DNA of 64,000 bases from Macrostomum hystrix (Eukaryota; Animalia; Platyhelminthes): assembly GCA_950097015.1 (NCBI GenBank), contig CATNEN010000037.1, forward strand, positions 2,232,001 through 2,296,000. The letters run 5' to 3'. Below, one piece after another: positions 29,508-64,000 of this stretch (positions are counted from its first letter, which is position 1; each line of letters opens with the position of its first letter). Both the position numbers and the translations under genes were made by a program. Below the pieces are notes generated by a model that was given only the letters and a program-made list of their open reading frames with translations, was not told the origin of the DNA and did no database searches.

Positions 29508-29812
29508 TAATAATAATAATTGCAGAAGGGCTGTGGGCAGTGGAACATCATTTAGTGATACTAGACCCGCAGCCAGCGAGGAGGCAATTCTGCCCATTTC
29601 GCTCAACTCCTGAGCACACACTCACTCAGATACTGTACGCAGGCACACACTCACACAGGTGTGTACATCTACCCTGACTTTCTCATCGTCAGGCAGTGTA
29701 CACTCTCACTGTGCCTTGGTGGTTGGCACCAAATAAATGTGGCCTCGCTGTGGAATCGAACTTAGGGACCTTGGTGCGAGAGGCAAACGCGATAACCGCT
29801 CTGCCACCGACC
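29508..29812 (-). mobile_element. tRNA-derived SINE family A, copy 1
   Basis: A box GGTGGCAGAGCGG, B box GTTCGATTCC, conserved GTGTACA...TGTACAC hairpin, (ATT)n tail. Homologous to 31487-31792, 40424-40726 and 56318-56624. Confidence 0.88.
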
Positions 29813-31486: not shown

Positions 31487-31792
31487 TAATAAAAATTATT
31501 CTTGCAGGAGGGCTGCGGGCAATGGCACATCGTTAGGTGATTCTGCCCATTTCGCTGACTCCTGAGCACACACACACAGGTGTGTACATCTGCCCTGACT
31601 TTCTCATCGCCAGGCAGTGTACACTTCACTGTGCCTTGGAGGTTGGCCCTTATAGGGCGTAAATTGAACGACAAGCCACCAAGCCTTCTCTCCGCAGCTG
31701 CGCCCCAAATGAATGTGGCCTCGCCACGGAATCGAGCTCAGGGACCTTGGTGCGAGAGGCAAACGCGTTAACCGCTCTGCCACCGACACCCC
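31487..31792 (-). mobile_element. SINE family A, copy 2 (in APBA intron 1)
   Basis: GGTGGCAGAGCGGTTAACGCGTTTGCCTCTCGCACCAAGGTCCCTGAGCTCGATTCC head, shared body and tail. Confidence 0.9.
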
Positions 31793-40423: not shown

Positions 40424-40726
40424 AAGAGTGACAAAGCGGTTAACGCGTTAGCCTCTCGCACCAAGGTCCCTGAGCTCGATTCCGCGATGAAGTCACATAA
40501 ATTTAGGGCGCAGAAAAGGTTTTGGGGTTTCTCGTGTAATTTACGCCCTTGAGGGCCAACCTCCAAGGCGCAGTGAAAGTGTACACCGCCTGACAATGAG
40601 AAAGTCAGGGCAGATGTACACCTGTGTGTGCGTGTGTGCTCAGGAGTCAGCGGAATGGGCAGAATTGCCTTCTCGTTGGCTGTCACCAAATGATGCGCGT
40701 AGGCCGCAGCCCTCTTGCAAATATTA
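40424..40726 (+). mobile_element. SINE family A, copy 3
   Basis: AGCGGTTAACGCGTTAGCCTCTCGCACCAAGGTCCCTGAGCTCGATTCC head and shared body. Confidence 0.88.
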
Positions 40727-42430
40727 TGCAGACAGAACTTTTTTGGTTTTAATCCGAAAAGTTCTCAGAAAAAAATCTTTGAAAATGATATTCTCCGGAC
40801 AAAATTGTGTTCAGGCAGACTTCGACATGATTTCGTCAAGATCGACAGGCCTCTGATAATGTCCCTCTCGAGGCGTCATCGATTGGGAAATAAAATACCA
40901 TGTATACCCTAGAAGTGGAAATTCTTCAGCTAGAGCGTGTCAGTTGTTGACAGGTTTGACAGACGCGTTTGTTTGATTCGAAACTTATTTACAAAACTTG
41001 TATTCGATGCAGTGATAACACATAATTTCGGTAGTCCTAATAATATTGGATTCACAAGAACTTGCCGTGGCAACTATTGTTAACTGATCGAATACATTTG
41101 ACTTTATGGAGATTTCATTTTCTTATGCAGTGCAAAACTTAAAGCTATCTATGTTTGGATTACTGGTGAATTGCAATCATTAATCAATACCTGTTTATAA
41201 TCGTATTTCAAATAATCAGTTAATTACCTGGTGTTTTACCAGTTGATCCATTGATTACCGGTGATTTTCCCATTAATCTGTTAAGAAAATCTAAACTTTT
41301 TAAAACTACAAAAGTACAATTTTTTGTCGCTAAAGGCTCGTACCTGGATCTCGTTCGCCTGTCGTATAGAGATGTAAAAAATTAAGGTGAGTTACAAAAC
41401 AACGATGTGAATCAGTTATAGTATTAAGAATCGTCCGAAACGTAATAGGGTGATACTAGCTAACATTACAGACTTTAGTCTTGCTTTATCCATTAAATAT
41501 TTAATTGACATCCTTGGCATCATTCAGTAGAGAATAATTAATTATCTGTTACTGCACGACAATTAGCGGAAAATCGATTTAAACGAATCGATCGGAACAA
41601 GTACGTTCCCTAGACGAAGGTTGGAATTTCCCTAAGGAAAGATTTGGTACAAGATTAGCCTTTCAATTCTGGGTAATTATAAACTCGAATTCGTCAGAAA
41701 AAAGCTTAGTGAAATTCTTTTCGTGTCCCTTGTCACGCAAAATCTCCACTGGATGTGACACATTTTTATGCGAACCGGAAATCCAGTTTTTTTATTCTAC
41801 AAGCCATCAGAAAAACTGCAGGATGAACAGGAAATATAAATAAATAAGTTTTTATTTGTAACAATAAATAATTTCACGAATGATAAGGTTCCAACAGTAT
41901 AATAAATTACTATATACAGAATGTTAATATAAAAGTAATTAAAGCGTGAATAACCATGCAAAGTGTTAATACAATTTTTTTTATATTTGATGTTATTTTT
42001 GTTATCATGTTGGGCATAGTATGGTTTAAATATGATTTGGGTGGCCCACTGAGTTGCAAATTTCAAATAGTACAAATAGGTTTAGAGTTATGTTTACATG
42101 GCCATAGTCATAGTCAGCGTTAATAGTCAAAGTCAATGTCATTGTACCATGACCTTTTTGCCCGGCGGGCAGAAAGTCTTGCCCGTTAATGGCCATTATA
42201 GATGAATTAATGCTCGGTAATTTTCTTGCGGGCAGTTAATAGCCATTGAACAACGCTGAGCAAGGGTTTTAATGAGCAGCGTTAAACTATGTCTAAGGGG
42301 AATTCCCACAAGGAATTCCCTTTGGATTCTTGTATTTCAGACGTAAAGTGTGTATTTTCATTGAGCAACGCTGGGATTCCCGCCATTAAATACCGCGGGG
42401 TTTTAATGGACGACATAGACAAGGTGGAAT

Positions 42431-51170: not shown

Positions 51171-51944
51171 ACAGATACGAGCCATTTTACCAAACAATTT
51201 TAAAGAGCCAGCTGACTTGTAAAATGGACTCGCGAAGATGTCGAAATTCCAACACAGAAATGTCACAACGCCATAATTGAAATACGTAGCCATTGTTTTA
51301 AACAAATATTTGACACGTAGTATTGAAAAGAAAATACTTGAAAACAAGGGAAATTAAAATAATGATGTCTTGATGGGTGAAAACGGAATCATTGTGGACA
51401 GCTACTCATGTGTCCTGGCGTTCAAGAATGATTGCAGAGTAAAATATTTCTTCTGCTTTGCAGAAATCAAACAAATAAAACAAAAATGTGACAACGACAA
51501 CTCCCAAACCGAATGACTGATTTTCGTGAGTCCACCACATTTGCGAGTAAAGTGACTTAATTATAACGCATAAAATACAAGTAATAACATACTCGTAGTT
51601 ATATTAATAACAATGCGCTATAAATGCCAACTATACAACAACAACACAACAATTGTAATTATAGATGGCTTAGACTTTATCCTATCAATCACGTGATCTT
51701 ACTGTGGCGCGTCTTCTCGGTGTGTTTTTATGGAGTTTTTGTTTATTGCACAGAATCAGATACGCTATTCTGCGCAATAACTATAATCAAGGCGTCAAGA
51801 TGGAGACATCTAGTAGCAGATCACTCAGTATCATACTCACCTATAAGATTAGTCTCAGACTGTTTTATAGCTGCGATCAAAGTCGGCCAAAAAGAAAATG
51901 AAAAAGTGCAAATTTGGATAAGACAAACTAAATCTCTTATCCCA

Positions 51945-52657
51945 CTAACTCTTCCCTTCGTGTCTTCTGCCACTGTCTCTTCCCTTCGTGTCTTCTCCTA
52001 CTGTCTGTTCCCTTCGTGTCTTCTCCCACTGTCTCTTCCCTTCGTGTCTTCTCCTACTGTCTGTTCCCTTCGTGTCTTCTCCCACTGTCTCTTCCCTTCG
52101 TGTCCTCTCCCACTGTCTCTTCCCTTCGTGTCTTCTCCCACTGTCTCTTCCCTTCGTGTCTTCTCCCACTGTCTCTTCCCTTCGTGTCCTCTCCCACTGT
52201 CTCTTCCCTTCGTGTCTTCTCCCACTGTCTCTTCCCTTCGTGTCTTCTCCCACTGTCTCTTCCCTTCGTGTCCTCTCCCACTGTCTCTTCCCTTCGTGTC
52301 CTCTCCCACTGTCTCTTCCCTTCGTGTCCTCTCCCACTGTCTCTTCCCTTCGTGTCTTCTCCCACTGTCTCTTCCCTTCGTGTCCTCTCCCACTGTCTCT
52401 TCCCTTCGTGTCCTCTCCCACTGTCTCTTCCCTTCGTGTCCTCTCCCACTGTCTCTTCCCTTCGTGTCCTCTCCCACTGTCTCTTCCCTTCGTGTCTTCT
52501 CCCACTGTCTCTTCCCTTCGTGTCTTCTCCCACTGTCTCTTCCCTTCGTGTCCTCTCCCACTGTCTCTTCCCTTCGTGTCCTCTCCCACTGTCTCTTCCC
52601 TTCGTGTCCTCTCCCACTGTCTCTTCCCTTCGTGTCCTCTCCCACTGTCTCTTCCCT
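51945..52657 (+). repeat. 28-bp minisatellite (CTCTTCCCTTCGTGTCTTCTCCCACTGT)n
   Basis: Tandem units; an inverted copy lies at 53262-53662. Confidence 0.97.
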
Positions 52658-52972
52658 TAGTGTCGAAACTTTTTGCGAGTCTTAGTTTGTCCACTGAAAT
52701 GTACACCTGGGTGTACTCATCAGAACAAGCCCACAGAATTACCAAATGATGCTTCTTGCCAACAACCAATTGCTGATATTGCTCGTATATCCCAAAATGT
52801 CTATCTTGCTACTTGCAGCCGTAGAAATGAATAAAAAAGTGCGCATATGAATTCAAAATTTGTACAATTTTTAACACACCTATTGCTAATCAACAGACAG
52901 CACGTGTATTTATATTTTAAGATAAAATGGAACAATTCTCCAATAGAAATGCATGAGAAATGCTTTTTTCAG

Positions 52973-53261: not shown

Positions 53262-53662
53262 AGATACACACGAAGGGAAGAGACAGTGAGAGAAGACACG
53301 AAGGGAAGAGACAGTGGGAGAAGACACGAAGGGAAGAGACAGTGGGAGAAGACACGAAGGGAAGAGACAGTGGGAGAAGACACGAAGGGAAGAGACAGTG
53401 GGAGAAGACAAGAAGGGAAGAGACAGTGGGAGAAGACACGAAGTGAAGAGACAGTATGAGAAGGCGCGAAGGGAAGAGACAGTATGAGAAGGCGCGAAGG
53501 GAAGAGACAGTAGGAGAAGACACGAAGGGAAGAGACAGCGGGAAAAGACACGAAGGGAAGAGACAGTGGGAGAAGACACGAAGGGAAGAGACAGCGGGAA
53601 AAGACACGAAGGGAAGAAACAGTTGGAGAAGACACGAAGGTAAGAGACAGTAGGAGAAGGGA
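53262..53662 (-). repeat. Inverted array of the same 28-bp unit, just downstream of the RCC1L stop
   Basis: GAAGGGAAGAGACAGTGGGAGAAGACAC is the reverse complement of the 51945-52657 unit. Confidence 0.95.
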
Positions 53663-53722: not shown

Positions 53723-54166
53723 TCAGGCGTGGGCCAGTCCGCAGACAATGGTGTGGTCCACCCCACACCGAGTCCACAACACCCGGCAGGGCAGTGACAC
53801 CTGCAGCGGGAAGCACTGATTGGTCTTGTGTCCCAGACCGAGGCAGCCGGAGCGTTGGTCGCCCCAGGTGTACAGCGAGCCTCGGTTAGTGATGGCTGCA
53901 AAATGGTACATGCCAGCCTCCAGGTGGACAACCTGAGACTCGTTGGCCAGTTGGCCGCGGCCGAACAGGCCGTCGGGAATCTGGCGCGGCTCGGACAGCT
54001 GAGTGACGTCAGGGCCGAGGCCCAGCCGGCCGTAGCCCCACACCCAGACACGGCCGCAGGTGGTTAGCAGGGCGCACATTGAACCGGCGGCTGCCACCTG
54101 GGCCACGCGCTGATTGGCCGACAAGACTGAGTGCATCACGTGATCTAGTCGGATTGGACGATCCAC
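53723..54166 (-). CDS. RCC1L: RCC1-like mitochondrial protein, exon 3
   Basis: Acceptor ATTTTTAG at 54167. VWVWGYGRLGLGP...GMYHFAAITNRGSLYTWG...GCLGLG...FPLQVSLP...CGVDHT* matches the WBSCR16/RCC1L C-terminus. Confidence 0.92.
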   Translation of the reverse strand: MDRPIRLDHVMHSVLSANQRVAQVAAAGSMCALLTTCGRVWVWGYGRLGLGPDVTQLSEPRQIPDGLFGRGQLANESQVVHLEAGMYHFAAITNRGSLYTWGDQRSGCLGLGHKTNQCFPLQVSLPCRVLWTRCGVDHTIVCGLAHA

Positions 54167-54394
54167 CTAAAAATAGGAATTTGGTGAATTAATTGCTGTT
54201 TATATTTCTGATTGCTTTGTGATCACGGAATGTTTATAGTGGTTGCTATAGACGACAGACCAGGTAAACAATATTTGCTATATAGATAATAATAAGTAAT
54301 AAAGCTAGTTGCTATGAGGATTAAACATGAAAAAATGTGACTCTGCGACTTTTTAGGTAAGATAAGATAAAAGTTTTACACAAGATAAAACAAC

Positions 54395-54605
54395 AGTTGC
54401 CACGCAGAAAACACCCGATAAAACAAAGGTTGTTAGGCGGATTACAAAAGGTAAAACAACGGTTGCTATGAAGACTACACAAAATAAAACAACGGTTGTT
54501 ATGCAGTTTCACCACACAAAACAACGGTTGCTATGCAGATTTCACGATACACAACAACGGTAGCTATGCAGATTTCACCACACAAATCAACGGTTGCTAT
54601 GCAGA
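54395..54605. repeat. Degenerate ~30-bp tandem repeat (ACAAAACAACGGTTGCTATGCAGATTTCACC) in RCC1L intron 2
   Basis: Recurring AACGGTTGCTATG. Confidence 0.8.
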
Positions 54606-54617
54606 TTACAGCCTCAC

Positions 54618-55346
54618 CTGCAGCGAATCGGTGCCCAGCTGGCCGTACTCGGAGTTGCCCCAGCCGAGAACGCAGCCATCGCGATCAAGAGCCAGCACGG
54701 TGTCAGCCCGGCAGGCCAGGCCGACCAACGGGACGCCGACGTCGACGAGCCGCAGACGGTCGGCATTGTCGAATCCGCCGTGGCCCAGTTGGCCGTCGGC
54801 GCCTAGGCCGCAGGAGTACAATCGGCCATCGTCAGTCAGCAGGTAGCTGCTGTCCTGACCGCAGACGGCCTGCAGAACAGAGTCGGGAGCGCATGGCAGC
54901 GCCAGCCGGATCGACGCCGACTCGCCGGCTGGCCGGCCGCACTGGCCAAAAGCATTATTGCCGAACGAGAAGCCGCCGTCGTTGGTGACGACCAGGGAGT
55001 GAGCCCGACCGGCGGCCAGGCGGAGCAGCCGGAAGCGACCGGAGGCCAGCTCGGCCGGATGGACCGGAAGGCGGACCTGCGTGGGCCGGAGAATCAATTC
55101 GTGTCCAGGCACGCTGGTTGTGGACAGAAATCTCGGATTCGAATCCGACACCGCGTCTGAATCCGGCGCCGGCTCCGACATCGCCAGCGGGCCCAGCTGA
55201 CCGTCCGTGTTGGCGCCGCAGGCCATTAAAATGCCGCGATTGGCGCCGCGACGACAGGCGAACAGAGTGTAGCCGTAGCCGGTGGCGCAGTCCAGCACGC
55301 GAATTCCTCGAGTGGCCAACTCGGCTATGCGGGCCGGAGCCACTAC
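54618..55346 (-). CDS. RCC1L: RCC1-like mitochondrial protein, exon 2
   Basis: CATGYGYTLF, AAGRAHSLVV, FGNNAFGQCGR, VCGQDSS, YSCGLGADGQLG, GWGNSEYGQL. Acceptor CTAATCTCACCCAG, donor GTGAGG, phase 0/0. Confidence 0.94.
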
Positions 55347-55489
55347 CTGGGTGAGATTAGCGACCCAGGTTTTAGTATGGTGGATTAGGCTAATCCAGTT
55401 TCTCTGCTCATGGACATAGTCAAAAAGGTATTCAATTCAAGGTTGTCCGCTTTTGGGTCACTAACAACAAAAACCTGTACATTTAAATC

Positions 55490-55720
55490 CATGTACCTTT
55501 ATTGTACATTTCCGACTCGAAATCTTGTACACTACCGAACTATAATCTTGTACAGTACCGAATCACAATCTTGTACACTACTGAACTATAATATTGTATA
55601 CTACCGAATTTTTACCTCGTAGACTACCGAGCCACAATCTTGTAACTTCTGAACTATAATCTTTTACACCGAACATATTATACAATTCAGACCCATAAGG
55701 CCATAATCTAGTAAACTTCC
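55490..55720. repeat. Degenerate AATCTTGTACACTACCGAACT repeat in RCC1L intron 1
   Basis: Recurring motif. Confidence 0.7.
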
Positions 55721-55950
55721 TAATCATAAAGTTGTACATTCCTGAAAAAATTATTGTACAGTACATAGCCATAATTTAGTACAATAGACTAAGCCTGATT
55801 ATTACCTACTTTAAACGACAATCGTGTTCTTTTTTCTGAGTTACAGCTTTACGCAAAGCTTTTTGCCAGCCGAAATTAAATGCATTCAGGTTAAATTTGA
55901 CAGATTGGCTTTTAGAATTGTGACAAAAGACAGCGGGTAGGTTCACTCAC

Positions 55951-56190
55951 GTGATCTCTCAGCCCCCTGCCGGGCTTTGGCAATGCGAACTTGGCAATGC
56001 CCAGCGCGCCAGTGACTGGCCAGCCGCAGCCGTACAGTCGCTGCTTCGACGCCGGCGAGCTGCGACCAGCGGTCAAGTTAAACTCTGTCGTAGCATTCTC
56101 TATATGACGCCGGATTGTTGTTTTACTACGTTGGGCCACAGCCACAGCTTGGCCGTAGCAGACATTGGCGCGAGCTGTGCTGACCACCGA
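55951..56190 (-). CDS. RCC1L: RCC1L exon 1 (presequence-like N-terminus plus first blade); no in-frame ATG
   Basis: LYGCGWPVTGALGIAKFALPKPG aligns with RCC1L VWGFSFSGALGVPSFVVP. Donor GTGAGT at 55950, phase 0. The frame opens right after TATCTGTGTCCGCCTAG (AG 56192-56191). Confidence 0.8.
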
Positions 56191-56317
56191 CTAGGCGGAC
56201 ACAGATACTGGTACCGCACTGAAACTGTTCCCAGAGCCGATATGATTCATTTGGAATCCGCTAGTTCGCTTATGAGAAATAATTGAGATTATAATACTAT
56301 TAAAACAACTGTCAAAA

Positions 56318-56624
56318 ATCAAGGTCGTTGAGCTCGATTTCGCGGCGAGGCCACATTCATTTTGGGGCGTAGAAAGGGTTTGAGGGCTTGTCGTGCAATT
56401 AACGATCATGATGGCCAACCTCCAATGCACAGTGAGAGTGTACACTGCCCGACGATGAGAAATTCAGGGCAGATGTACACAGTGTGAGCGTGTGCCTGCG
56501 AACGGTATCTGCGTGTGTGCTTAGGAGTGAGCGAAATTGACAGAATCGCCTTGTCGCTGGCTGAGGGTCTACCGTCCCCAAATAATGTGCCATTCGCCCA
56601 CAGTCCTCATGCAATTATTATTAC
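56318..56624 (+). mobile_element. SINE family A, copy 4 (5'-truncated)
   Basis: Starts at CAAGGTC...GAGCTCGATT. Shared hairpin, body and ATTATTATT tail. Confidence 0.85.
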
Positions 56625-57313
56625 TAACCCAACTGGGCCAGATGTACTGTCAGTAGCACAGATATTCAGTCCATGGACTATGGAAGAGGGGGCCACCGCA
56701 CCCAGTTAAATTTCTACCATAGGTAATGCTCGTGCTCATTTTCAGCTACTCCGAAGCAAGGTAAAGAAAATGTCAAAACAAAAAGTATTTTAGGACTGCA
56801 AAAATGACACATGGCAGTTTATTGGAGCATTTCTTAAATAGCAATGAACAGATAATGTTTACAGATAAAGTAAAACAGTAGGTAAAAAATAAGAAACGCA
56901 AAAATTAGCCTCCGCGTAGAGTTAGCACTTAAATTTAATTGGCGGCGCTGTAATTTACTGGACTTAGAATAAAATTTGAATGAAAAAGCCATATAAAAAC
57001 TAACTAATTAAAAATTATTGCGGAAAAGAAAGCGGGTTAAATAGCGTATCGAATGCGCAGGCAAAATGGTGACAATTTATACAATTGTTATAATAGAATT
57101 TTTCAAGCCAATTAAGCCAAGGAGCAGGCACTTTAACCTTTAGTAGAAAAATCAAGCAATTAAAGACTTGCAACAAAGGGGTCCTGAAAGGGGATCTATG
57201 GAGCAATCAATTTGAGAATTTGGGCGCGCTATCAATCCTTTCCACGGTGCTCGAAACCAGCCACCGCATTTGACTACTGTGATCTCAGCCGTTGCCTCCT
57301 CGCAATTCGATGA

Positions 57314-57565
57314 AGAACGAGTACGCGCTACTACTCGAGCAGTGTTGTCTCTGGCGGTGGATTGTCCAATTCGATTTGCACCTGTGGCTGCGCAAGTTGC
57401 CGCTTCATGGCCGCCTTCAAACAGGAATGCGCACACTCGGTCGGGTTCAGAAATGGAGAATATGATGGCAGTACTACAACCTGCCAGGTCAGCTCAAACT
57501 GGATAGGTGTCAGTCAGCTTGCGTCGCAACTCCTTCAACGTCATGAGAGGATTACTATCCAGTGA
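57314..57565 (+). pseudogene. Possible SWIM-type zinc-finger fragment (CTC-x14-CAH), perhaps a transposase remnant
   Basis: Reads RYYSSSVV...ICTCGCASCRFMAAFKQECAH. No start or context; motif match only. Confidence 0.25.
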
Positions 57566-57695
57566 TGAAAGAAGCAGTTGGATGCGTTGCTCTTCCAGTT
57601 TCGATGCTCGATCTCCACCACGCGGTCCCGACGTCCCGTGATTCCATAGCGACGCCTGATAGGATACACTGTTTTTCTCTGCGTCCAGAGAAAAC

Positions 57696-58219
57696 TTTCC
57701 ACTAAGGATTAAATTGCTTGCTCCATAGACCCCCCTTTCAGGCCATAGACAATGAAAACAAGTCTTTAATAGCTAGATTCTCCACTAAGGATTAAATTGC
57801 TTGCTCCATAGACCCCCCTTTCAGGCCATAGACAATGAAAACAAGTCTTTATAGCTAGATTTTCCACTAAGGATTAAATTGCTTGCTCCATAGACCCCCC
57901 TTTCAGGCCATAGACAATGAAAACAAGTCTTTAATAGCTAGATTTTCCACTAAGGATTAAATTGCTTGCTCCATTGACCCCCTTTCAGGCCATAGACAAT
58001 GAAAAACAAGTCTTTAATAGCTAGATTTTCCACAAAGGATTAAATTGCTTGCTCCATTGACCCCCTTTCAGGCCATAGACAATGAAAACAAGTCTTTAAT
58101 AGCTAGATTTTCCACAAAGGATTAAATTGCTTGCTCCATTGACCCCCTTTCAGGCCATAGACAATGAAAACAAGTCTTTAATAGCTAGATTTTCCACAAA
58201 GGATTAAATTGCTTGCTCC
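57696..58219. repeat. 82-83-bp tandem repeat, ~6 copies
   Basis: TTTCCACTAAGGATTAAATTGCTTGCTCCATAGACCCCCTTTCAGGCCATAGACAATG... recurs at 57699, 57782, 57864, 57947. Confidence 0.95.
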
Positions 58220-59629: not shown

Positions 59630-62158
59630 TTAAATTTGTTCGTGCGAATCCCCAAACGGAATATTTGGCACACTGGGCAGTTGCTGCTGTAACTCTAGAT
59701 TAGAATCGTCGCAGTACAGGCTGCGCATCCAAAATACAGTGTGCGAATTGTCCACGAACAGCAGGTCGCGTCCGTTACGCAGTACTTGCACCTTGTTGAT
59801 ACTCTGACGCGAGTAGAGAGACACCATGCCAAGTTTCAACGGTGATTGCGATGGCACTGTGTAAAGTCTGTCTCGTAGCTCCGAGTCGGGTAGGCAGCAC
59901 ACATGTACACAATCAGAGGCAATGATCAGCTTGTGATGACGCACCCTATTTTGATCAGTGTGCACAGTCCAAGCAATACAACCGACATCGCTGGGCTGTA
60001 GTGGAACACCAATCTGCACCGGTTGACAATCGACCAGGTCAATCAGGCGTCCGTCGCGCATAGCCCACAAAGAAAATCGACTGTCATCGAATGCCGCAGC
60101 AAGAAGAAAAGTGTCTTCTCCGATTCGATGTGAGAATCGTAGACAGCGTAGAGGACAATTACGAGATTCCTCTTCTTTCCGAGACCGCCTGTCTACTATA
60201 CATGCCGTATTATCACCTGCTACCTTCCAGAGGATCATGCTACCAAGATCCGTGCCGCCTGCAACGAAGCCGAATAGGTAAGGGCAACTATTGCAGCACA
60301 GAAGACTCTCCTGCAAGTCATCTTCCATAGAACCGGCAACGCTTTGGTTGATGTTTAGTTCATCAGAAGACAGCAACTTCCAGCCCCGATCAAACAGCAG
60401 TAGAGCGGAAACACTCGTGGAGAACAGATGCAAATCAACCGGGAGAAGTTGCTTGTGGGGCAATGGGAGCTGCTGGACGCAAGAACAGTCCCGATAGACA
60501 ACAATAGTGTCACTTCTATTGGATCCAATAAAGCCCTGGCAGTCATAAAGAAAAACAATGTCACTAATTTTCACAGTCGATTCGATAGTGTTAAAAGTCC
60601 ATGATTCGTTGCATTCCTTCCCGATGATAACCTTATTGTAGAAGGTAAAAACGGCATACTTTCCGCTCGGGGCAAGGCGAATAGTTGCAGCTTTACTGAG
60701 TCGGTTTTCTTCTCCACTTAATTTTCCATTCTCGACAGTGCGCAAGTCATTTTCACTGGACTTTAAAATTATTAGCGACTTACGGACTGACTGGCAGGCA
60801 ACGATAATTTCGTTGTTAACAGTAACTGCGTCAAAAACAGTTCGCAACCGAAGAGTGATGTTCTCAGGTCCAAAAAAGATTGAACTAATATTAGTGTTAG
60901 GGGCGTGAAACGTTGTACTAAGATTGGCTTTCCAGCAAGTAAGAACACCTTCGGTAGACATTTCGGACGTCGAATACAAAAATGATTTGCCCGACGTAGG
61001 AAATGCCAGGCATTTCGTAAAACTCCCAGACCCATTCAGTTCGTTAACTAGTTGCAGCTTGCACGTCGATTCGGTTAGATCCGTCACACGGTAAAGGTAA
61101 ATGTGGGCACGAGTGCTAGTGCCAACGGCCAAATAGACACCCTCACTATTTATGGCTATGCTAGTGAAGGACGTCACACGAGGTCCATGTTCGCAATGCA
61201 GCTTATTTAGGGTCCTGGGATTCCATAGGTGTATTTCATTATTTGCTATTGACGCCGCAAATTGTGGACCAGGGCGTGGCTCAAATACACACTGGATGGG
61301 ATTTGAGTTCGAAGCATGTCCCGTATACTTGTTGATTTCGTAACGACTTTCGTAAATGTAGACACAATCGTTAGGACCAGAGACAGCTACTTGGGTTGCA
61401 TTAACGGAAGAAACCGCTGCTATGTGATTAATCTTTGCATTACCCAAGTCCCTTTCTTGATCGATAAAAAATTCTGAGCTCAAGTTTGTAATTCGATCCG
61501 TCAATGTGAAGACTCGCATCTTTCCATCGCTTCCGCCCACTAGGAGTTTGTCTTCAGACTCGAAGCACATAGCTGTAAAGACTGAATTGTTCTCATTTTC
61601 TCTATTTTCTTTGTAGACAGGTTCGCTGCTCTTAAAATATGGCGGCATACGCCCAGTTGTGCCCGATCTGGGTCTCCCATGAGGAAAGTGCAAGCTCCCT
61701 TCTTCAGAAGGTGGTGGAGCCGCAGGAGATGGTCGGACACCCACATCAAATGCAGAGCTTGGCAGTGGGTAGCGATAGAGCGCATATTCAGTCAAGATTA
61801 ACAGTGACTCGTTGTTTGGACGGAAAAGCGCTGCGACAACTTCAATGCCTTCTGCATCACCACGTGAATCGCTGGTGACCATGTCCTCCTTGCGGACGTG
61901 GAAGGTGCGCAGACCTGTGCTTAAGTCCAAAATAACTGCAGATGAGTCGCTCGTAACAACAGCATGCTTGCAATAGCGATCGAATGCGAAATTAGTCACA
62001 TCAGAGTCAACCTTGATAGTATTGTAGATCTGCTCTTCCGTCTGACCCGCGTTTAGCCAATAATAGAAGCAGAAAAAGTTTCTATGCTTCTTAGCAGCCT
62101 CTTCGGCACATTCACGAACTATGTTTCCCTCTGAAAGGGTCAGTGCCAGTTGAATCAT
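59630..62158 (-). CDS. APAF1: APAF1 segment 3: end of HD2 plus WD40 regulatory repeats
   Basis: IQLAL...FCFYYWLN aligns with APAF1 IVQLGL...YLEWIN. WD-like repeats LLVGGSDGKMRVFTL, FAASIANNEIHLWN, GGTDLGSMILWKV, AAFDDSRFSLWAM. 842-codon open frame. Confidence 0.88.
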   Translation of the reverse strand: MIQLALTLSEGNIVRECAEEAAKKHRNFFCFYYWLNAGQTEEQIYNTIKVDSDVTNFAFDRYCKHAVVTSDSSAVILDLSTGLRTFHVRKEDMVTSDSRGDAEGIEVVAALFRPNNESLLILTEYALYRYPLPSSAFDVGVRPSPAAPPPSEEGSLHFPHGRPRSGTTGRMPPYFKSSEPVYKENRENENNSVFTAMCFESEDKLLVGGSDGKMRVFTLTDRITNLSSEFFIDQERDLGNAKINHIAAVSSVNATQVAVSGPNDCVYIYESRYEINKYTGHASNSNPIQCVFEPRPGPQFAASIANNEIHLWNPRTLNKLHCEHGPRVTSFTSIAINSEGVYLAVGTSTRAHIYLYRVTDLTESTCKLQLVNELNGSGSFTKCLAFPTSGKSFLYSTSEMSTEGVLTCWKANLSTTFHAPNTNISSIFFGPENITLRLRTVFDAVTVNNEIIVACQSVRKSLIILKSSENDLRTVENGKLSGEENRLSKAATIRLAPSGKYAVFTFYNKVIIGKECNESWTFNTIESTVKISDIVFLYDCQGFIGSNRSDTIVVYRDCSCVQQLPLPHKQLLPVDLHLFSTSVSALLLFDRGWKLLSSDELNINQSVAGSMEDDLQESLLCCNSCPYLFGFVAGGTDLGSMILWKVAGDNTACIVDRRSRKEEESRNCPLRCLRFSHRIGEDTFLLAAAFDDSRFSLWAMRDGRLIDLVDCQPVQIGVPLQPSDVGCIAWTVHTDQNRVRHHKLIIASDCVHVCCLPDSELRDRLYTVPSQSPLKLGMVSLYSRQSINKVQVLRNGRDLLFVDNSHTVFWMRSLYCDDSNLELQQQLPSVPNIPFGDSHEQI

Positions 62159-62552
62159 AGCGGAATCTGATCGACGAGTTGCCTAAGTATGTAGACTGAA
62201 TGCGGAAAATCGGCGATCGGAAAAAATCAACAAAGTCAGTTAGGCTTTTCTTAGTGGCATCGCTCATATTAAAAAACTTAATAGAGTACTGATAAACAAA
62301 GGCCAGATTATCTGCACCAATGCGACAGCATAGCCACGAAATAAAATCAAAATCGCGCAAAATTTCCAACTTATTGTCGAGAGAAATCACGTCACAACTA
62401 ACTAAATGATAGACAAGGTTGTATGCCAAGTAGTGGAACTCATCGCTGCTATCGATCTCAATCCAGCTACTCAAGTTCTTCTTTAGGCTCAGGACATTCT
62501 CCACAAACTGGTTGTTGTAGCTAGTTCTCTTTTCCTTGAATTCGTTCTTCAT
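62112..62552 (-). CDS. APAF1: APAF1 segment 2: helical domain 2, in a +1 frame relative to segment 1
   Basis: HYLAYNLVYHLVS...LRDFDFISWLCCRIGADNLAFVYQY...DFVDFF parallels APAF1 YWYNFLAYHMAS...LMFSLDWIKAKTELVGPAHLIHEFVEY...NFQEFL. Confidence 0.75.
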   Translation of the reverse strand: MKNEFKEKRTSYNNQFVENVLSLKKNLSSWIEIDSSDEFHYLAYNLVYHLVSCDVISLDNKLEILRDFDFISWLCCRIGADNLAFVYQYSIKFFNMSDATKKSLTDFVDFFRSPIFRIQSTYLGNSSIRFRYDSTGTDPFRGKHSS

Positions 62553-63960
62553 TGCGCTTACGAATCAGATCGTGCAGAGTAAGAAGCTGCACGTCTTGTT
62601 GGTAAGTCTCAATTGTGGCAATTGAACGTCTGGAAAACGCTACCATTAAATCCAAACAGTCATCCTCTGCGAGTGGACTGCCATCTTCATCTCGCCAGCA
62701 GAAAGTTGAAAGGAATCCAACAGAAAGAAATGTGTCTTCCGGAAAAATAGTTAACTGGAGATAATGCTCTTTGTACTTGTATTCCAGATCGTCAATACTA
62801 ACCAAGATGGCATCCTTAATAGATTCGTATTGATAGTCGCCAGGCTCTAAATCAACATTATTAAGAAGGTTGTCCTCATACTTCTTTAGGAATCTCTCGA
62901 ATTGATTAAGTCGGCCACGAAGAAGACCTCCAAAAATGGACACAATAAAAGGATTGCCTTTGCATTTCGTATGTAGCCTGTGAATGCGCTGCAAGTCTTG
63001 GTCGCTGAATGAGTCGGAAACTTGACCCTGCGAGTGTTCACTGTTGATCATTTGGGTCAAAAGTCTAACTGCTGCGTCTTCAGTGAAGCCTTCATTAACA
63101 GAGATTGTGACGCGTCGACTAGGATCTCCAGTTTGAATGTTTCTAAAAATGTCTTCCTTCCTTGAAGTAACAACAATTCTTGCTTGAACGTTGAAATGTC
63201 GTAAGATTTTTGGTTCCCACACGTCATCCAGGACAATCAGACCGCATGGATACTTCTCTATCATGACTTTGCGCAATTCATTTGTGGCATCTGTCAGACT
63301 ACCTGGTGGCGTAGCGCGTAACTCTGGATTCAAACGAATGCAAATATTCTGCATTTTCGCCAGGAGCAATGAATCCAATTCGTCGCTGCGCAAATTTCCA
63401 ATTGTGAACCAGAACACATGATTGAAGAAGTAAGAGGCAATGGGACTACCACTAGCAGCAGTGCCTCTGATGGCCTGGGCCGTTATTACCGACTTCCCAG
63501 CGCCGCCGTGGCCTTTCACAAGAATCCAGCCACCGTCAGAGCGGGCTGACAACTTGACTAAACTTTCCTTTAGTTCGGACACATACTTGAGCTCAATGTT
63601 GCCTTGTGGAGCAATTGGAATACCACCATTTATGAAGACGGCCTCATAATCACTAGTTGATTTGGTTAGATAAATCTGTGGACTTTGCTGATAATTTGAG
63701 AGCTCACTTGACCAAAATGAGTAGGGACCAGCCAGGCTAGAAATCAGGCAGTTAAACGTTCTGGTGTCACTCTTTTTCACTAGAAGGTCCACTAAGGTGC
63801 TAGTTTGCTCATTTGTGCTGCCTGCTTTCATTATTATTTGCTTGTCCTCAAGGGTAATAAGGCCAGAGCTAATTAACGAATCCTCAATGTCACGAAAGTC
63901 AACATCCCTGGCCAAAGCACCCTTAAGGGCCATCAGGGCAGCTTTATGTCGCAGGTCCAT
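62521..63960 (-). CDS. APAF1: APAF1 segment 1: CARD plus NB-ARC
   Basis: ATG 63960 MDLRHKAALMALKGALARD (CARD); Walker A GHGGAGKS; Walker B LIVLDDVW; RIVVTSR; GNP; LHD motif. Confidence 0.92.
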   Translation of the reverse strand: MDLRHKAALMALKGALARDVDFRDIEDSLISSGLITLEDKQIIMKAGSTNEQTSTLVDLLVKKSDTRTFNCLISSLAGPYSFWSSELSNYQQSPQIYLTKSTSDYEAVFINGGIPIAPQGNIELKYVSELKESLVKLSARSDGGWILVKGHGGAGKSVITAQAIRGTAASGSPIASYFFNHVFWFTIGNLRSDELDSLLLAKMQNICIRLNPELRATPPGSLTDATNELRKVMIEKYPCGLIVLDDVWEPKILRHFNVQARIVVTSRKEDIFRNIQTGDPSRRVTISVNEGFTEDAAVRLLTQMINSEHSQGQVSDSFSDQDLQRIHRLHTKCKGNPFIVSIFGGLLRGRLNQFERFLKKYEDNLLNNVDLEPGDYQYESIKDAILVSIDDLEYKYKEHYLQLTIFPEDTFLSVGFLSTFCWRDEDGSPLAEDDCLDLMVAFSRRSIATIETYQQDVQLLTLHDLIRKRNEERIQGKEN

Positions 63961-64000
63961 TGATTTGCAGTTTAACCACAGAGGCTGCAAATTTCTTCAA

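What the first reader, a model, noticed from the sequence alone, without database searches (positions are those of the whole stretch)
55951..56210. RCC1L reading frame opens exactly at a splice acceptor with no ATG: candidate spliced-leader-donated start codon
Seen: the in-frame TAG at 56193-56191 is also the AG of a pyrimidine-rich acceptor (TATCTGTGTCCGCCTAG|TCG GTG GTC...). The frame then runs in phase 0 through the conserved first blade with no ATG. Adding one Met gives MSVVSTARANVCYGQAVAVAQRSKTTIRRH, which is Arg/Ser/Thr/Ala-rich with no acidic residues for 30 aa (presequence-like), and a 471-aa protein close to vertebrate RCC1L length. Established: flatworm spliced leaders end in AUG, which can act as the initiator in schistosomes; RCC1L is mitochondrial. 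Inference: the start Met and hence mitochondrial targeting may depend on trans-splicing. A SINE sits only ~125 bp upstream.
Basis: partly seen in the sequence, partly recalled or inferred. Interest (0 to 1): 0.7.

Follow-up and report, generated by a model that had tools for sequence, protein, structure and literature searches.

The report
Flatworm RCC1L gene without start codon

Summary
On the minus strand there is a three-exon RCC1L/WBSCR16 gene of 470 codons (56190-55951, 55346-54618, 54166-53723). Its first exon opens directly after an in-frame TAG (56193-56191) and has no in-frame ATG; the first Met codon is about residue 121.

The spliced-leader reading is supported only indirectly:
- The genome is a Macrostomum, and all Macrostomum leaders described end in AUG.
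- All four M. lignano orthologue copies also lack a genomic ATG. The RNA-based annotation calls them 5'-partial, and the longest starts in phase 0 right after a CAG acceptor.
- No upstream exon is conserved between the two species.
- The gene is under purifying selection.

One complication is new. From there the leader AUG would be out of frame (32 codons, then stop). So either this species uses the TAG acceptor, or one base is wrong or mutated near 56176-56190.

This scan has already reported many RNA-confirmed cases of the same habit elsewhere in this genome. This is a new member of a known kind, of modest interest.

The parts
56191..56193 (-). TAG: in-frame stop that closes the RCC1L frame upstream. 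Its AG is the only acceptor that would put a spliced-leader AUG in the RCC1L frame.
   Evidence: It is preceded by tatctgtgtccgcc (10 of 14 pyrimidines). It does not match the published trans-acceptor motif [T/C]TNCAG.
55951..56190 (-). RCC1L exon 1: 80 codons, phase 0, no in-frame ATG. Codons 1-30 are presequence-like; the first propeller blade motif (LYGCGWPVTGALG) starts near codon 52.
   Evidence: It aligns to residues 1-84 of the M. lignano protein P0074, 63% identical from Cys11 onward. dN/dS is about 0.35.
55347..55950 (-). Intron 1 (gtgagt...cccag), containing a short tandem repeat.
   Evidence: The intron position is shared with M. lignano.
54618..55346 (-). RCC1L exon 2: 243 codons with RCC1 repeats.
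   Evidence: Pfam RCC1, RCC1_2 and WD40_RLD. Best hits are RCC1L/WBSCR16. Best PDB match is 5xgs RCC1L, E 1.5e-33. 75% amino-acid identity to M. lignano, dN/dS about 0.23.
54167..54617 (-). Intron 2 (gtgagg...tttttag), showing that a TAG acceptor is used in cis within this same gene.
53723..54166 (-). RCC1L exon 3: 147 codons plus the TGA stop (53725-53723).
   Evidence: 83% amino-acid identity to M. lignano, dN/dS about 0.12.
56216..56227 (-). CAG|TTTCAGTGC, matching 11 of 12 bases of the M. lignano RCC1L CDS 5' end (CAG|TTTCACTGC). It holds two CAG acceptors (AG at 56226-56225 and 56220-56219), both in frame +1 relative to RCC1L. A leader AUG joined there reads 32 or 30 codons and stops at TAG 56128-56126.
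   Evidence: It is the only 12-mer with at most 1 mismatch in a 180 x 156 nt comparison. 4% of shuffles give such a match anywhere. By my own arithmetic, a match at that fixed M. lignano 12-mer has a chance of about 4e-4.
56208..56210 (-). A third upstream CAG (ggtacCAG|tat), in frame +2 relative to RCC1L; a possible competing acceptor.
   Evidence: Read; the frame was worked out by hand.
56320..56626 (.). Dispersed ~300-nt repeat (SINE-like) about 130 nt upstream of the TAG acceptor.
   Evidence: Copies at 29508-29773, 31566-31749 and 40462-40727, 71-83% identical. No tRNA or Rfam hit.

Best explanation
This is the RCC1L (WBSCR16) gene of a Macrostomum flatworm that is not M. lignano. Its pre-mRNA carries no initiator codon. 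The roughly 35-nt spliced leader, which ends in AUG, is trans-spliced to an acceptor at the start of exon 1. With the sequence as given, that acceptor is TAG 56193-56191, so the mature mRNA reads ...UUGCAUG|UCG GUG GUC... and encodes a 471-residue protein beginning MSVVSTARANV...

The first ~30 residues are basic, rich in Ser/Thr/Ala, free of acidic residues and poorly conserved. They would act as a mitochondrial presequence in front of the seven-blade RCC1-like propeller.

Shown here: the ATG-less gene model, its RCC1L identity, purifying selection, the same ATG-less layout in M. lignano, and the lack of a conserved upstream exon. Taken from the literature: Macrostomum leaders end in AUG, flatworm leader AUGs can initiate translation, and RCC1L is mitochondrial. 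Inferred: that the leader is joined here, which AG it uses, and that the protein is imported into mitochondria.
For: - Gene model and missing ATG. The first in-frame Met is at about residue 121, inside the propeller.
- RCC1L identity.
- Macrostomum origin.
- Leader ends in ATG: M. lignano leader CGGTCTCTTACTGCGAAGACTCAATTTATTGCATG (PMC8629364). [quoted passage not shown]
- The leader AUG can initiate translation: Cheng et al. 2006, as cited in PMC9851317 and PMC12582326. It is in frame in 28% of S. mansoni trans-spliced mRNAs, and more than 40 cDNAs need it.
- M. lignano orthologue: PAA54412.1 and PAA47618.1 are 'partial'. The CDS starts at the base after ...aatCAG| in phase 0 (TTT CAC TGC...). 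All four copies have an in-frame TGA 5-7 codons upstream and no ATG between. That annotation was built from SL-trimmed transcripts and SL-read peaks (PMC5730564).
- No blastn or tblastx similarity between the species in the 3.4 kb between the upstream gene and exon 1. No ATG...GT[AG]AG phase-0 mini-exon there.
- Any exon that includes 56193-56191 in the RCC1L frame meets the stop. A productive junction must therefore lie at or after 56191, and TAG| is the only in-frame AG before the conserved part (read).
- The gene is under purifying selection, with dN/dS 0.12-0.35 per exon, so it should be translated.
- The N-terminal length before blade 1 (about 50 aa) matches other animals' RCC1L.
- A TAG acceptor is used in cis in intron 2 of this gene.
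Against:
- CCGCCTAG does not fit the published trans-acceptor motif [T/C]TNCAG.
- Three CAGs lie 17, 28 and 34 nt upstream. One of them (TTTCAG, 56219) fits the motif perfectly.
- The M. lignano acceptor motif is conserved at 56227-56216 and is out of frame here.
- An earlier follow-up in this genome found one such claim wrong because of a tiny upstream ATG exon. That is a lead, not a test.
- Only one positive charge falls in the first 20 residues, so the presequence is less typical than in M. lignano, which has 8-9 Arg/Lys in its first 34.
Confidence: 0.55

Rival explanations
1. The leader AUG is still the initiator, but the leader joins at the conserved upstream acceptor (CAG| 56225 or TTTCAG| 56219), as in M. 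lignano. The window then carries a one-base excess between about 56190 and 56176. That excess would be an assembly error or a frameshift in this allele or copy. The true protein would begin MFQC... or MC..., and the 'TAG' would be read as C-CTA-G.
For: - The 11-of-12 match CAG|TTTCAGTGC to the M. lignano CDS 5' end is the only such match near either gene, although nothing else upstream aligns.
- The first six codons align in that frame (F Q C G T S against F H C S R S).
- The window has 121 nt against 99 nt in M. lignano between this acceptor and the conserved Ile-Glu codons, a net +1 (counted by hand).
- TTTCAG fits the published trans-acceptor motif.
Against: - There is no homopolymer at the supposed error site.
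- The frame +1 peptide aligns only weakly to M. lignano (score 26 against 58 for the RCC1L frame).
- The stretch between the motif and GCT CGC aligns equally poorly in either frame (hand count).
- It needs an unobserved sequence error, or a loss-of-function allele in a gene that is otherwise intact and under selection.
Confidence: 0.22
2. A small cis-spliced upstream exon carries the ATG. It is joined to 56190 or to another AG within the first ~25 codons, so the leader, if present at all, only supplies the 5' UTR.
For: - There are 57 ATG...GT phase-0 combinations in the 3.4 kb upstream if any GT is allowed as donor.
- An earlier follow-up in this genome reports one gene with its ATG in a tiny upstream exon (unchecked lead).
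- A very short exon would escape blastn and tblastx.
Against: - None of the 57 has a GT[AG]AG donor.
- Nothing is conserved upstream between the species.
- The RNA-based M. lignano annotation gives no upstream exon and calls three full-length copies and one fragment 5'-partial.
- The frame stays open, and is conserved from at least Cys11 back to the acceptor in both species.
Confidence: 0.13
3. Translation starts at a non-AUG codon (for example GTG 56187-56185), or at Met ~121 giving a truncated protein; or this copy is a young pseudogene.
For: GTG is the second codon. If the upstream CAG acceptors are used, no AUG is available in the RCC1L frame.
Against: - The context of the GTG is poor (T at -3).
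- Met ~121 would remove the first blade and the whole N-terminal extension, which is conserved with M. lignano.
- dN/dS of 0.12-0.35 and an intact 470-codon frame argue against a pseudogene.
Confidence: 0.05

Closest known systems
Flatworm mRNAs that use the spliced leader's 3'-terminal AUG as initiator (Cheng, Cohen, Ndegwa & Davis 2006, J Biol Chem 281:733; cited in PMC9851317 and PMC12582326)
   Same: The leader ends in AUG. The recipient exon begins in phase 0 at an acceptor and has no ATG of its own. The encoded protein is a conserved housekeeping protein.
   Different: That work concerns Schistosoma cDNAs with the junction seen in RNA. Here the junction is predicted, not seen. The species is a free-living macrostomid, and the best-conserved acceptor is out of frame.
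M. lignano RCC1L genes BOX15_Mlig030897g4 / Mlig031987g2 / Mlig017935g2 (PAA54412.1, PAA47618.1, PAA62193.1; assembly GCA_002269645.1)
   Same: Orthologue with the same three phase-0 exons and the same upstream neighbour (an Apaf-1-like gene). It has no genomic ATG, its CDS is annotated 5'-partial starting right after an acceptor, and its N-terminus is basic and free of acidic residues.
   Different: Only 57-83% amino-acid identity per exon. The acceptor is CAG and the N-terminus is MFHCSRSGGAIARC... (4 residues longer). In the window the homologous CAG is out of frame and a TAG 34 nt downstream is in frame.
Echinococcus granulosus thioredoxin glutathione reductase: trans-spliced alternative mRNAs encoding mitochondrial and cytosolic variants (Agorio et al. 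2003, J Biol Chem 278:12920; listed in the references of PMC12582326)
   Same: A flatworm gene in which trans-splicing decides whether a mitochondrial N-terminus is made.
   Different: That case has two isoforms with different targeting. Here no second in-frame start exists before residue ~121, so only one product is expected. I did not read that paper, only its title.
Human RCC1L/WBSCR16 (PDB 5xgs; PMC7423155)
   Same: A seven-blade RCC1-like propeller behind an N-terminal extension of about 50-60 residues, and similar total length. It is mitochondrial and needed for mitoribosome large-subunit and 16S rRNA biogenesis.
   Different: The human gene has its own ATG and several cis-spliced isoforms. 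Exon 2 is only about 35-39% identical to other animals' RCC1L.

Membership tests
SL-AUG-initiated flatworm mRNA | The organism has a spliced leader ending in AUG | tested here: met
   The genome is a Macrostomum: the closest protein is from M. lignano, and scan note. M. lignano, M. cliftonense and M. hystrix leaders end in ATG and are identical where they overlap. No leader gene lies in this window, and the exact species was not identified.
SL-AUG-initiated flatworm mRNA | No genomic in-frame ATG between the upstream stop and the conserved protein core | tested here: met
   80 codons from TAG 56193-56191 hold no ATG. The same holds in four M. lignano copies.
SL-AUG-initiated flatworm mRNA | The leader is seen in RNA joined at an acceptor so that its AUG is in frame with the ORF | not testable with these tools
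No transcript-derived protein of this species is in the protein collections. Indirect support only: the M. lignano CDS starts in phase 0 right after a CAG.
SL-AUG-initiated flatworm mRNA | An acceptor in phase 0 at the start of the ORF | tested here: inconclusive
   TAG| 56191 is in phase 0. However, the acceptor conserved with M. lignano (56225) and the best motif match (56219) are in frame +1.
SL-AUG-initiated flatworm mRNA | Translation actually starts at the leader AUG | not testable with these tools
   This needs ribosome profiling or N-terminal proteomics.
RCC1L / WBSCR16 | RCC1-like seven-blade propeller (RCC1 repeats) | tested here: met
   Pfam RCC1, RCC1_2 and WD40_RLD hit exon 2. The RLD model covers residues 56-472 of the M. 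lignano orthologue.
RCC1L / WBSCR16 | Closest named relatives are RCC1L rather than RCC1, HERC, RPGR and the like | tested here: met
   The named top hits are RCC1L/WBSCR16 of oyster, copepod, mosquito and tapeworm. The best PDB chain is 5xgs RCC1L, E 1.5e-33, though HERC2 follows closely at 6e-31. No tree was built.
RCC1L / WBSCR16 | N-terminal mitochondrial presequence and mitochondrial location | tested here: inconclusive
   Composition only: no acidic residue in the first 30, net charge +5, but only +1 in the first 20. M. lignano has 8-9 basic residues in its first 34. No targeting predictor was available, and location was not tested.

The most novel reading that the evidence does not exclude
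Two related Macrostomum species use different trans-splice acceptors to put the leader AUG in frame with RCC1L: CAG|TTT in M. lignano, and a TAG 34 nt further downstream here. In this species the ancestral acceptor would survive as an out-of-frame decoy whose leader AUG opens a 33-codon dead-end ORF. Acceptor choice would then set how much RCC1L, and so how much mitoribosome assembly capacity, is made.
Probability: 0.2. Interest if true: 0.45.

Novelty: new member of a known kind. Interest (0 to 1): 0.27.

Why it matters
- If the leader AUG is the only start codon of RCC1L, then making this essential mitochondrial ribosome-assembly factor depends entirely on trans-splicing, and on which of several nearby AGs is used.
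- Gene finders that need a genomic ATG will truncate or miss such genes. The M. lignano copies are all filed as 'partial', and one is annotated from an internal Met (P0216, 354 aa).
- The mechanism has been known since 2006, and this scan has already reported many cases in this genome. This case therefore adds an example, plus a small evolutionary puzzle about acceptor turnover, and does not add a new principle.

Tried and rejected
I did not try run ids taken from papers.
- Exon 1 word search: no hit.
- Exon 2 word search: only distant RCC1L at up to 39% identity within the length limits.
- N-terminal region of the M. lignano protein: found only its own cluster. No transcript-derived protein of the window's species could be reached.
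- Exact look-up of the neighbouring 842-aa ORF, to identify the source genome: not on record.
- Searches for the M. lignano gene ids in paper texts and supplements: nothing.
All searches were exon by exon or with database proteins.
- ATG 56096 as start: rejected. It is out of frame, stops after 7 codons, and lies downstream of residues conserved with M. lignano.
- ATG near 56165: rejected, out of frame.
- A 24-nt 'intron' from GT 56214 to AG 56191 that might mend the frame: rejected. It is too short and does not restore the frame.
- The 'GGT GGT = GGC GGC' frame +1 match: on counting, it is no better than the frame 0 alignment.
- The gN suffix of M. lignano gene names as evidence of a polycistron: rejected. 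The prefix marks 95% clusters.
- SINE identity of the upstream repeat: no tRNA or Rfam match.

Full report
**What is there.** Read on the minus strand, window 56220-55941 is ...cagtatctgtgtccgccTAG|TCG GTG GTC AGC ACA GCT CGC ... GAT CAC|gtgagt.
- TAG 56193-56191 is in frame with the 80 codons that follow. None of those codons is ATG.
- With the next two open stretches this gives three phase-0 exons with canonical borders: 56190-55951, 55346-54618 (cccag|GTA...CAG|gtgagg) and 54166-53723 (tttttag|GTG...TGA). The total is 470 codons.
- Exon 2 carries RCC1 repeats.
- Its named relatives are 'RCC1-like G exchanging factor-like protein' and 'Williams-Beuren syndrome chromosome region 16 protein' of oyster, copepod, mosquito and tapeworm, at 33-39% identity.
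- The best solved structure is RCC1L 5xgs.
- The first Met codon of the model is residue 41 of exon 2, about residue 121 overall and already inside the propeller.

One point needs toning down: any frame closed by a TAG 'opens at an AG', so that coincidence alone is worth only about one in three.

**Which organism.** Earlier notes of this scan call the genome a Macrostomum. The exhaustive protein search with exon 2 found one close relative, P0074 (478 aa, 63% identity). This is M. lignano PAA54412.1, BOX15_Mlig030897g4, 'partial'.
- Per exon the window is 57%, 75% and 83% identical to it at the protein level.
- dS is about 0.8-0.9 and dN/dS is 0.35, 0.23 and 0.12.
- So the window comes from another Macrostomum species, and the gene has been under purifying selection.
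- The upstream neighbour on the same strand is an Apaf-1-like gene (CARD, NB-ARC, WD40). It ends at 59630 and precedes RCC1L in M. lignano too.

**Does the organism have a leader ending in AUG?** Yes, by the literature.
- The M. lignano leader is the 35-mer CGGTCTCTTACTGCGAAGACTCAATTTATTGCATG, and about 30% of genes receive it (PMC8629364).
- The AUG can act as initiator. According to PMC9851317, Cheng et al. 2006 found it in frame in 28% of S. mansoni trans-spliced mRNAs and required by more than 40 cDNAs.
- No leader gene lies in the window.

**Comparative evidence for an ATG-less start.** I fetched four M. lignano genomic copies (L001-L004).
- In L001 and L002 the annotated CDS begins at the first base after ...atcacaatCAG| and reads TTT CAC TGC AGC... 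(FHCS...) in phase 0.
- In all four copies the frame has a TGA 5-7 codons upstream of that CAG, with no ATG between.
- The open frame could have been extended 4-6 codons further upstream but was not. The CDS start therefore marks the 5' end of the transcript model.
- That annotation was built from SL-trimmed transcripts and from peaks of SL-containing reads (PMC5730564). A transcript end exactly after a CAG, in phase 0 and without an ATG, is what a leader-supplied start looks like.
- The two shorter 'partial' proteins (P0214, P0213) start a few codons later, not after an AG, and look like truncated models.
- The M. lignano N-terminus has 8-9 Arg/Lys and no acidic residue in its first 34 residues. 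The window's has 5 basic residues and no acidic one in its first 30, but only one positive charge in the first 20.
- Conservation between the species is poor before Cys11 and strong from ...RR.IE.ATTEF.LTAGR onward. That is the usual pattern for a cleavable presequence followed by the mature protein. This last point is inference.

**Is there an upstream ATG exon?** Nothing points to one, but it cannot be excluded.
- Between the Apaf-1-like gene's stop and exon 1 (3.4 kb) neither blastn nor tblastx finds any similarity between the species, while every coding exon on both sides is found.
- A scan of that stretch found no ATG followed in phase 0 by a GT[AG]AG donor. It found 57 candidates if any GT is allowed.
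- A very short exon cannot be excluded from sequence alone.
- With the sequence as given, any mRNA that contains 56193-56191 in the RCC1L frame meets the TAG. The productive junction, cis or trans, must therefore lie at 56191/56190 or further downstream.
- The next in-frame NAG codons are GAG at codons 31 and 36, which would remove the whole N-terminal extension.

**The complication.**
- It is the only 12-mer with at most one mismatch in a 180 x 156 nt comparison of the two upstream regions.
- 82 of 2000 shuffles give such a match somewhere.
- By my own arithmetic, the chance that it falls on the one 12-mer that spans the M. lignano junction is about 4e-4 (169 positions x 2.2e-6).
- From that acceptor, or from the TTTCAG| six bases on (which fits the published trans-acceptor motif [T/C]TNCAG), a leader AUG would read FQCGTSICVRLVGGQHSSRQCLLRPSCGCGPT and stop at TAG 56128-56126.
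- The window has 121 nt where M. lignano has 99 nt between this acceptor and the conserved Ile-Glu codons, a net +1.
- A third CAG (56208) is in the remaining frame. Only CCGCCTAG| is in frame, and it does not fit the motif.

Two readings remain.
- (a) This species uses the TAG acceptor, and the older acceptor persists upstream as a relic, a decoy or part of the splice signal. Intron 2 of the same gene uses a TAG acceptor. Intron 1 has a CTAAT only 11 nt before its AG, so short branch-to-AG distances that would skip nearby AGs seem possible here (read; inference).
- (b) The leader joins at the conserved CAG and one base is wrong or mutated between about 56190 and 56176. No homopolymer is present there. 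The frame +1 peptide aligns only weakly to M. lignano (score 26 against 58 for the RCC1L frame).

In both readings the leader AUG is the initiator.

**What could not be done.**
- The word searches found no protein of this species: exon 1, nothing; exon 2, only distant kin; the M. lignano N-terminus, only itself.
- An exact look-up of a neighbouring ORF found no record.

**Verdict.**
- It is supported by comparative and literature evidence, not by RNA at this locus.
- Dependence of mitochondrial import on trans-splicing follows only in the trivial sense that no protein is made without the AUG. No second in-frame start would give a cytosolic isoform.
- The mechanism is known (Cheng et al. 2006). 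A flatworm precedent links trans-splicing to a mitochondrial N-terminus (Echinococcus TGR, Agorio et al. 2003, known to me only from the reference list). This scan has already reported many RNA-confirmed cases in this same genome.
- I file it as a new member of a known kind, with a minor open question about acceptor turnover between species.

Noticed in passing
window 59630-63990 (minus strand): An Apaf-1-like gene (CARD + NB-ARC in the 489-aa ORF, WD40 propellers in the 842-aa ORF) lies directly upstream of RCC1L on the same strand. The same neighbour precedes RCC1L in M. lignano, so the gene order is conserved.
   Followed up: partly
window 51940-52664 and 53268-53659: A 28-nt satellite (TCCCACTGTCTCTTCCCTTCGTGTCCTC; 26 and 14 copies, 92-96% matches) sits in two arrays of opposite orientation about 600 nt apart. 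The second array begins about 65 nt after the RCC1L stop codon, so it probably lies in or just after the 3' UTR.
   Followed up: no
window 57696-58219: An 82-nt tandem array (6.4 copies, 97% matches) lies in the RCC1L upstream region. It is flanked at 57150-57700 by sequence with open frames that have no Pfam match.
   Followed up: partly
window 56320-56626; copies at 29508-29773, 31566-31749, 40462-40727: A dispersed ~300-nt repeat. In the other copies its end (GGAATCGAGCTCAGGGACCTTGGTGCGAGAGGC...) resembles a reverse-complemented tRNA 3' half, which would fit a tRNA-derived SINE pointing away from RCC1L. That end is degenerate in the copy next to RCC1L, and ARAGORN and Rfam find nothing.
   Followed up: partly
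L001-L004 (M. lignano NIVC01002913.1, NIVC01004389.1, NIVC01001965.1, NIVC01002993.1): M. lignano has at least four RCC1L loci, all without a genomic ATG and annotated with different 5' ends (FHCS..., GGAIA..., IARC...). A fifth is annotated from an internal Met (P0216, 354 aa). These look like annotation artefacts caused by a leader-supplied start codon.
   Followed up: partly
window 55500-55674 and 54376-54610: Both RCC1L introns are largely made of short tandem repeats (units of 23/46 nt and 33/66 nt).
   Followed up: no
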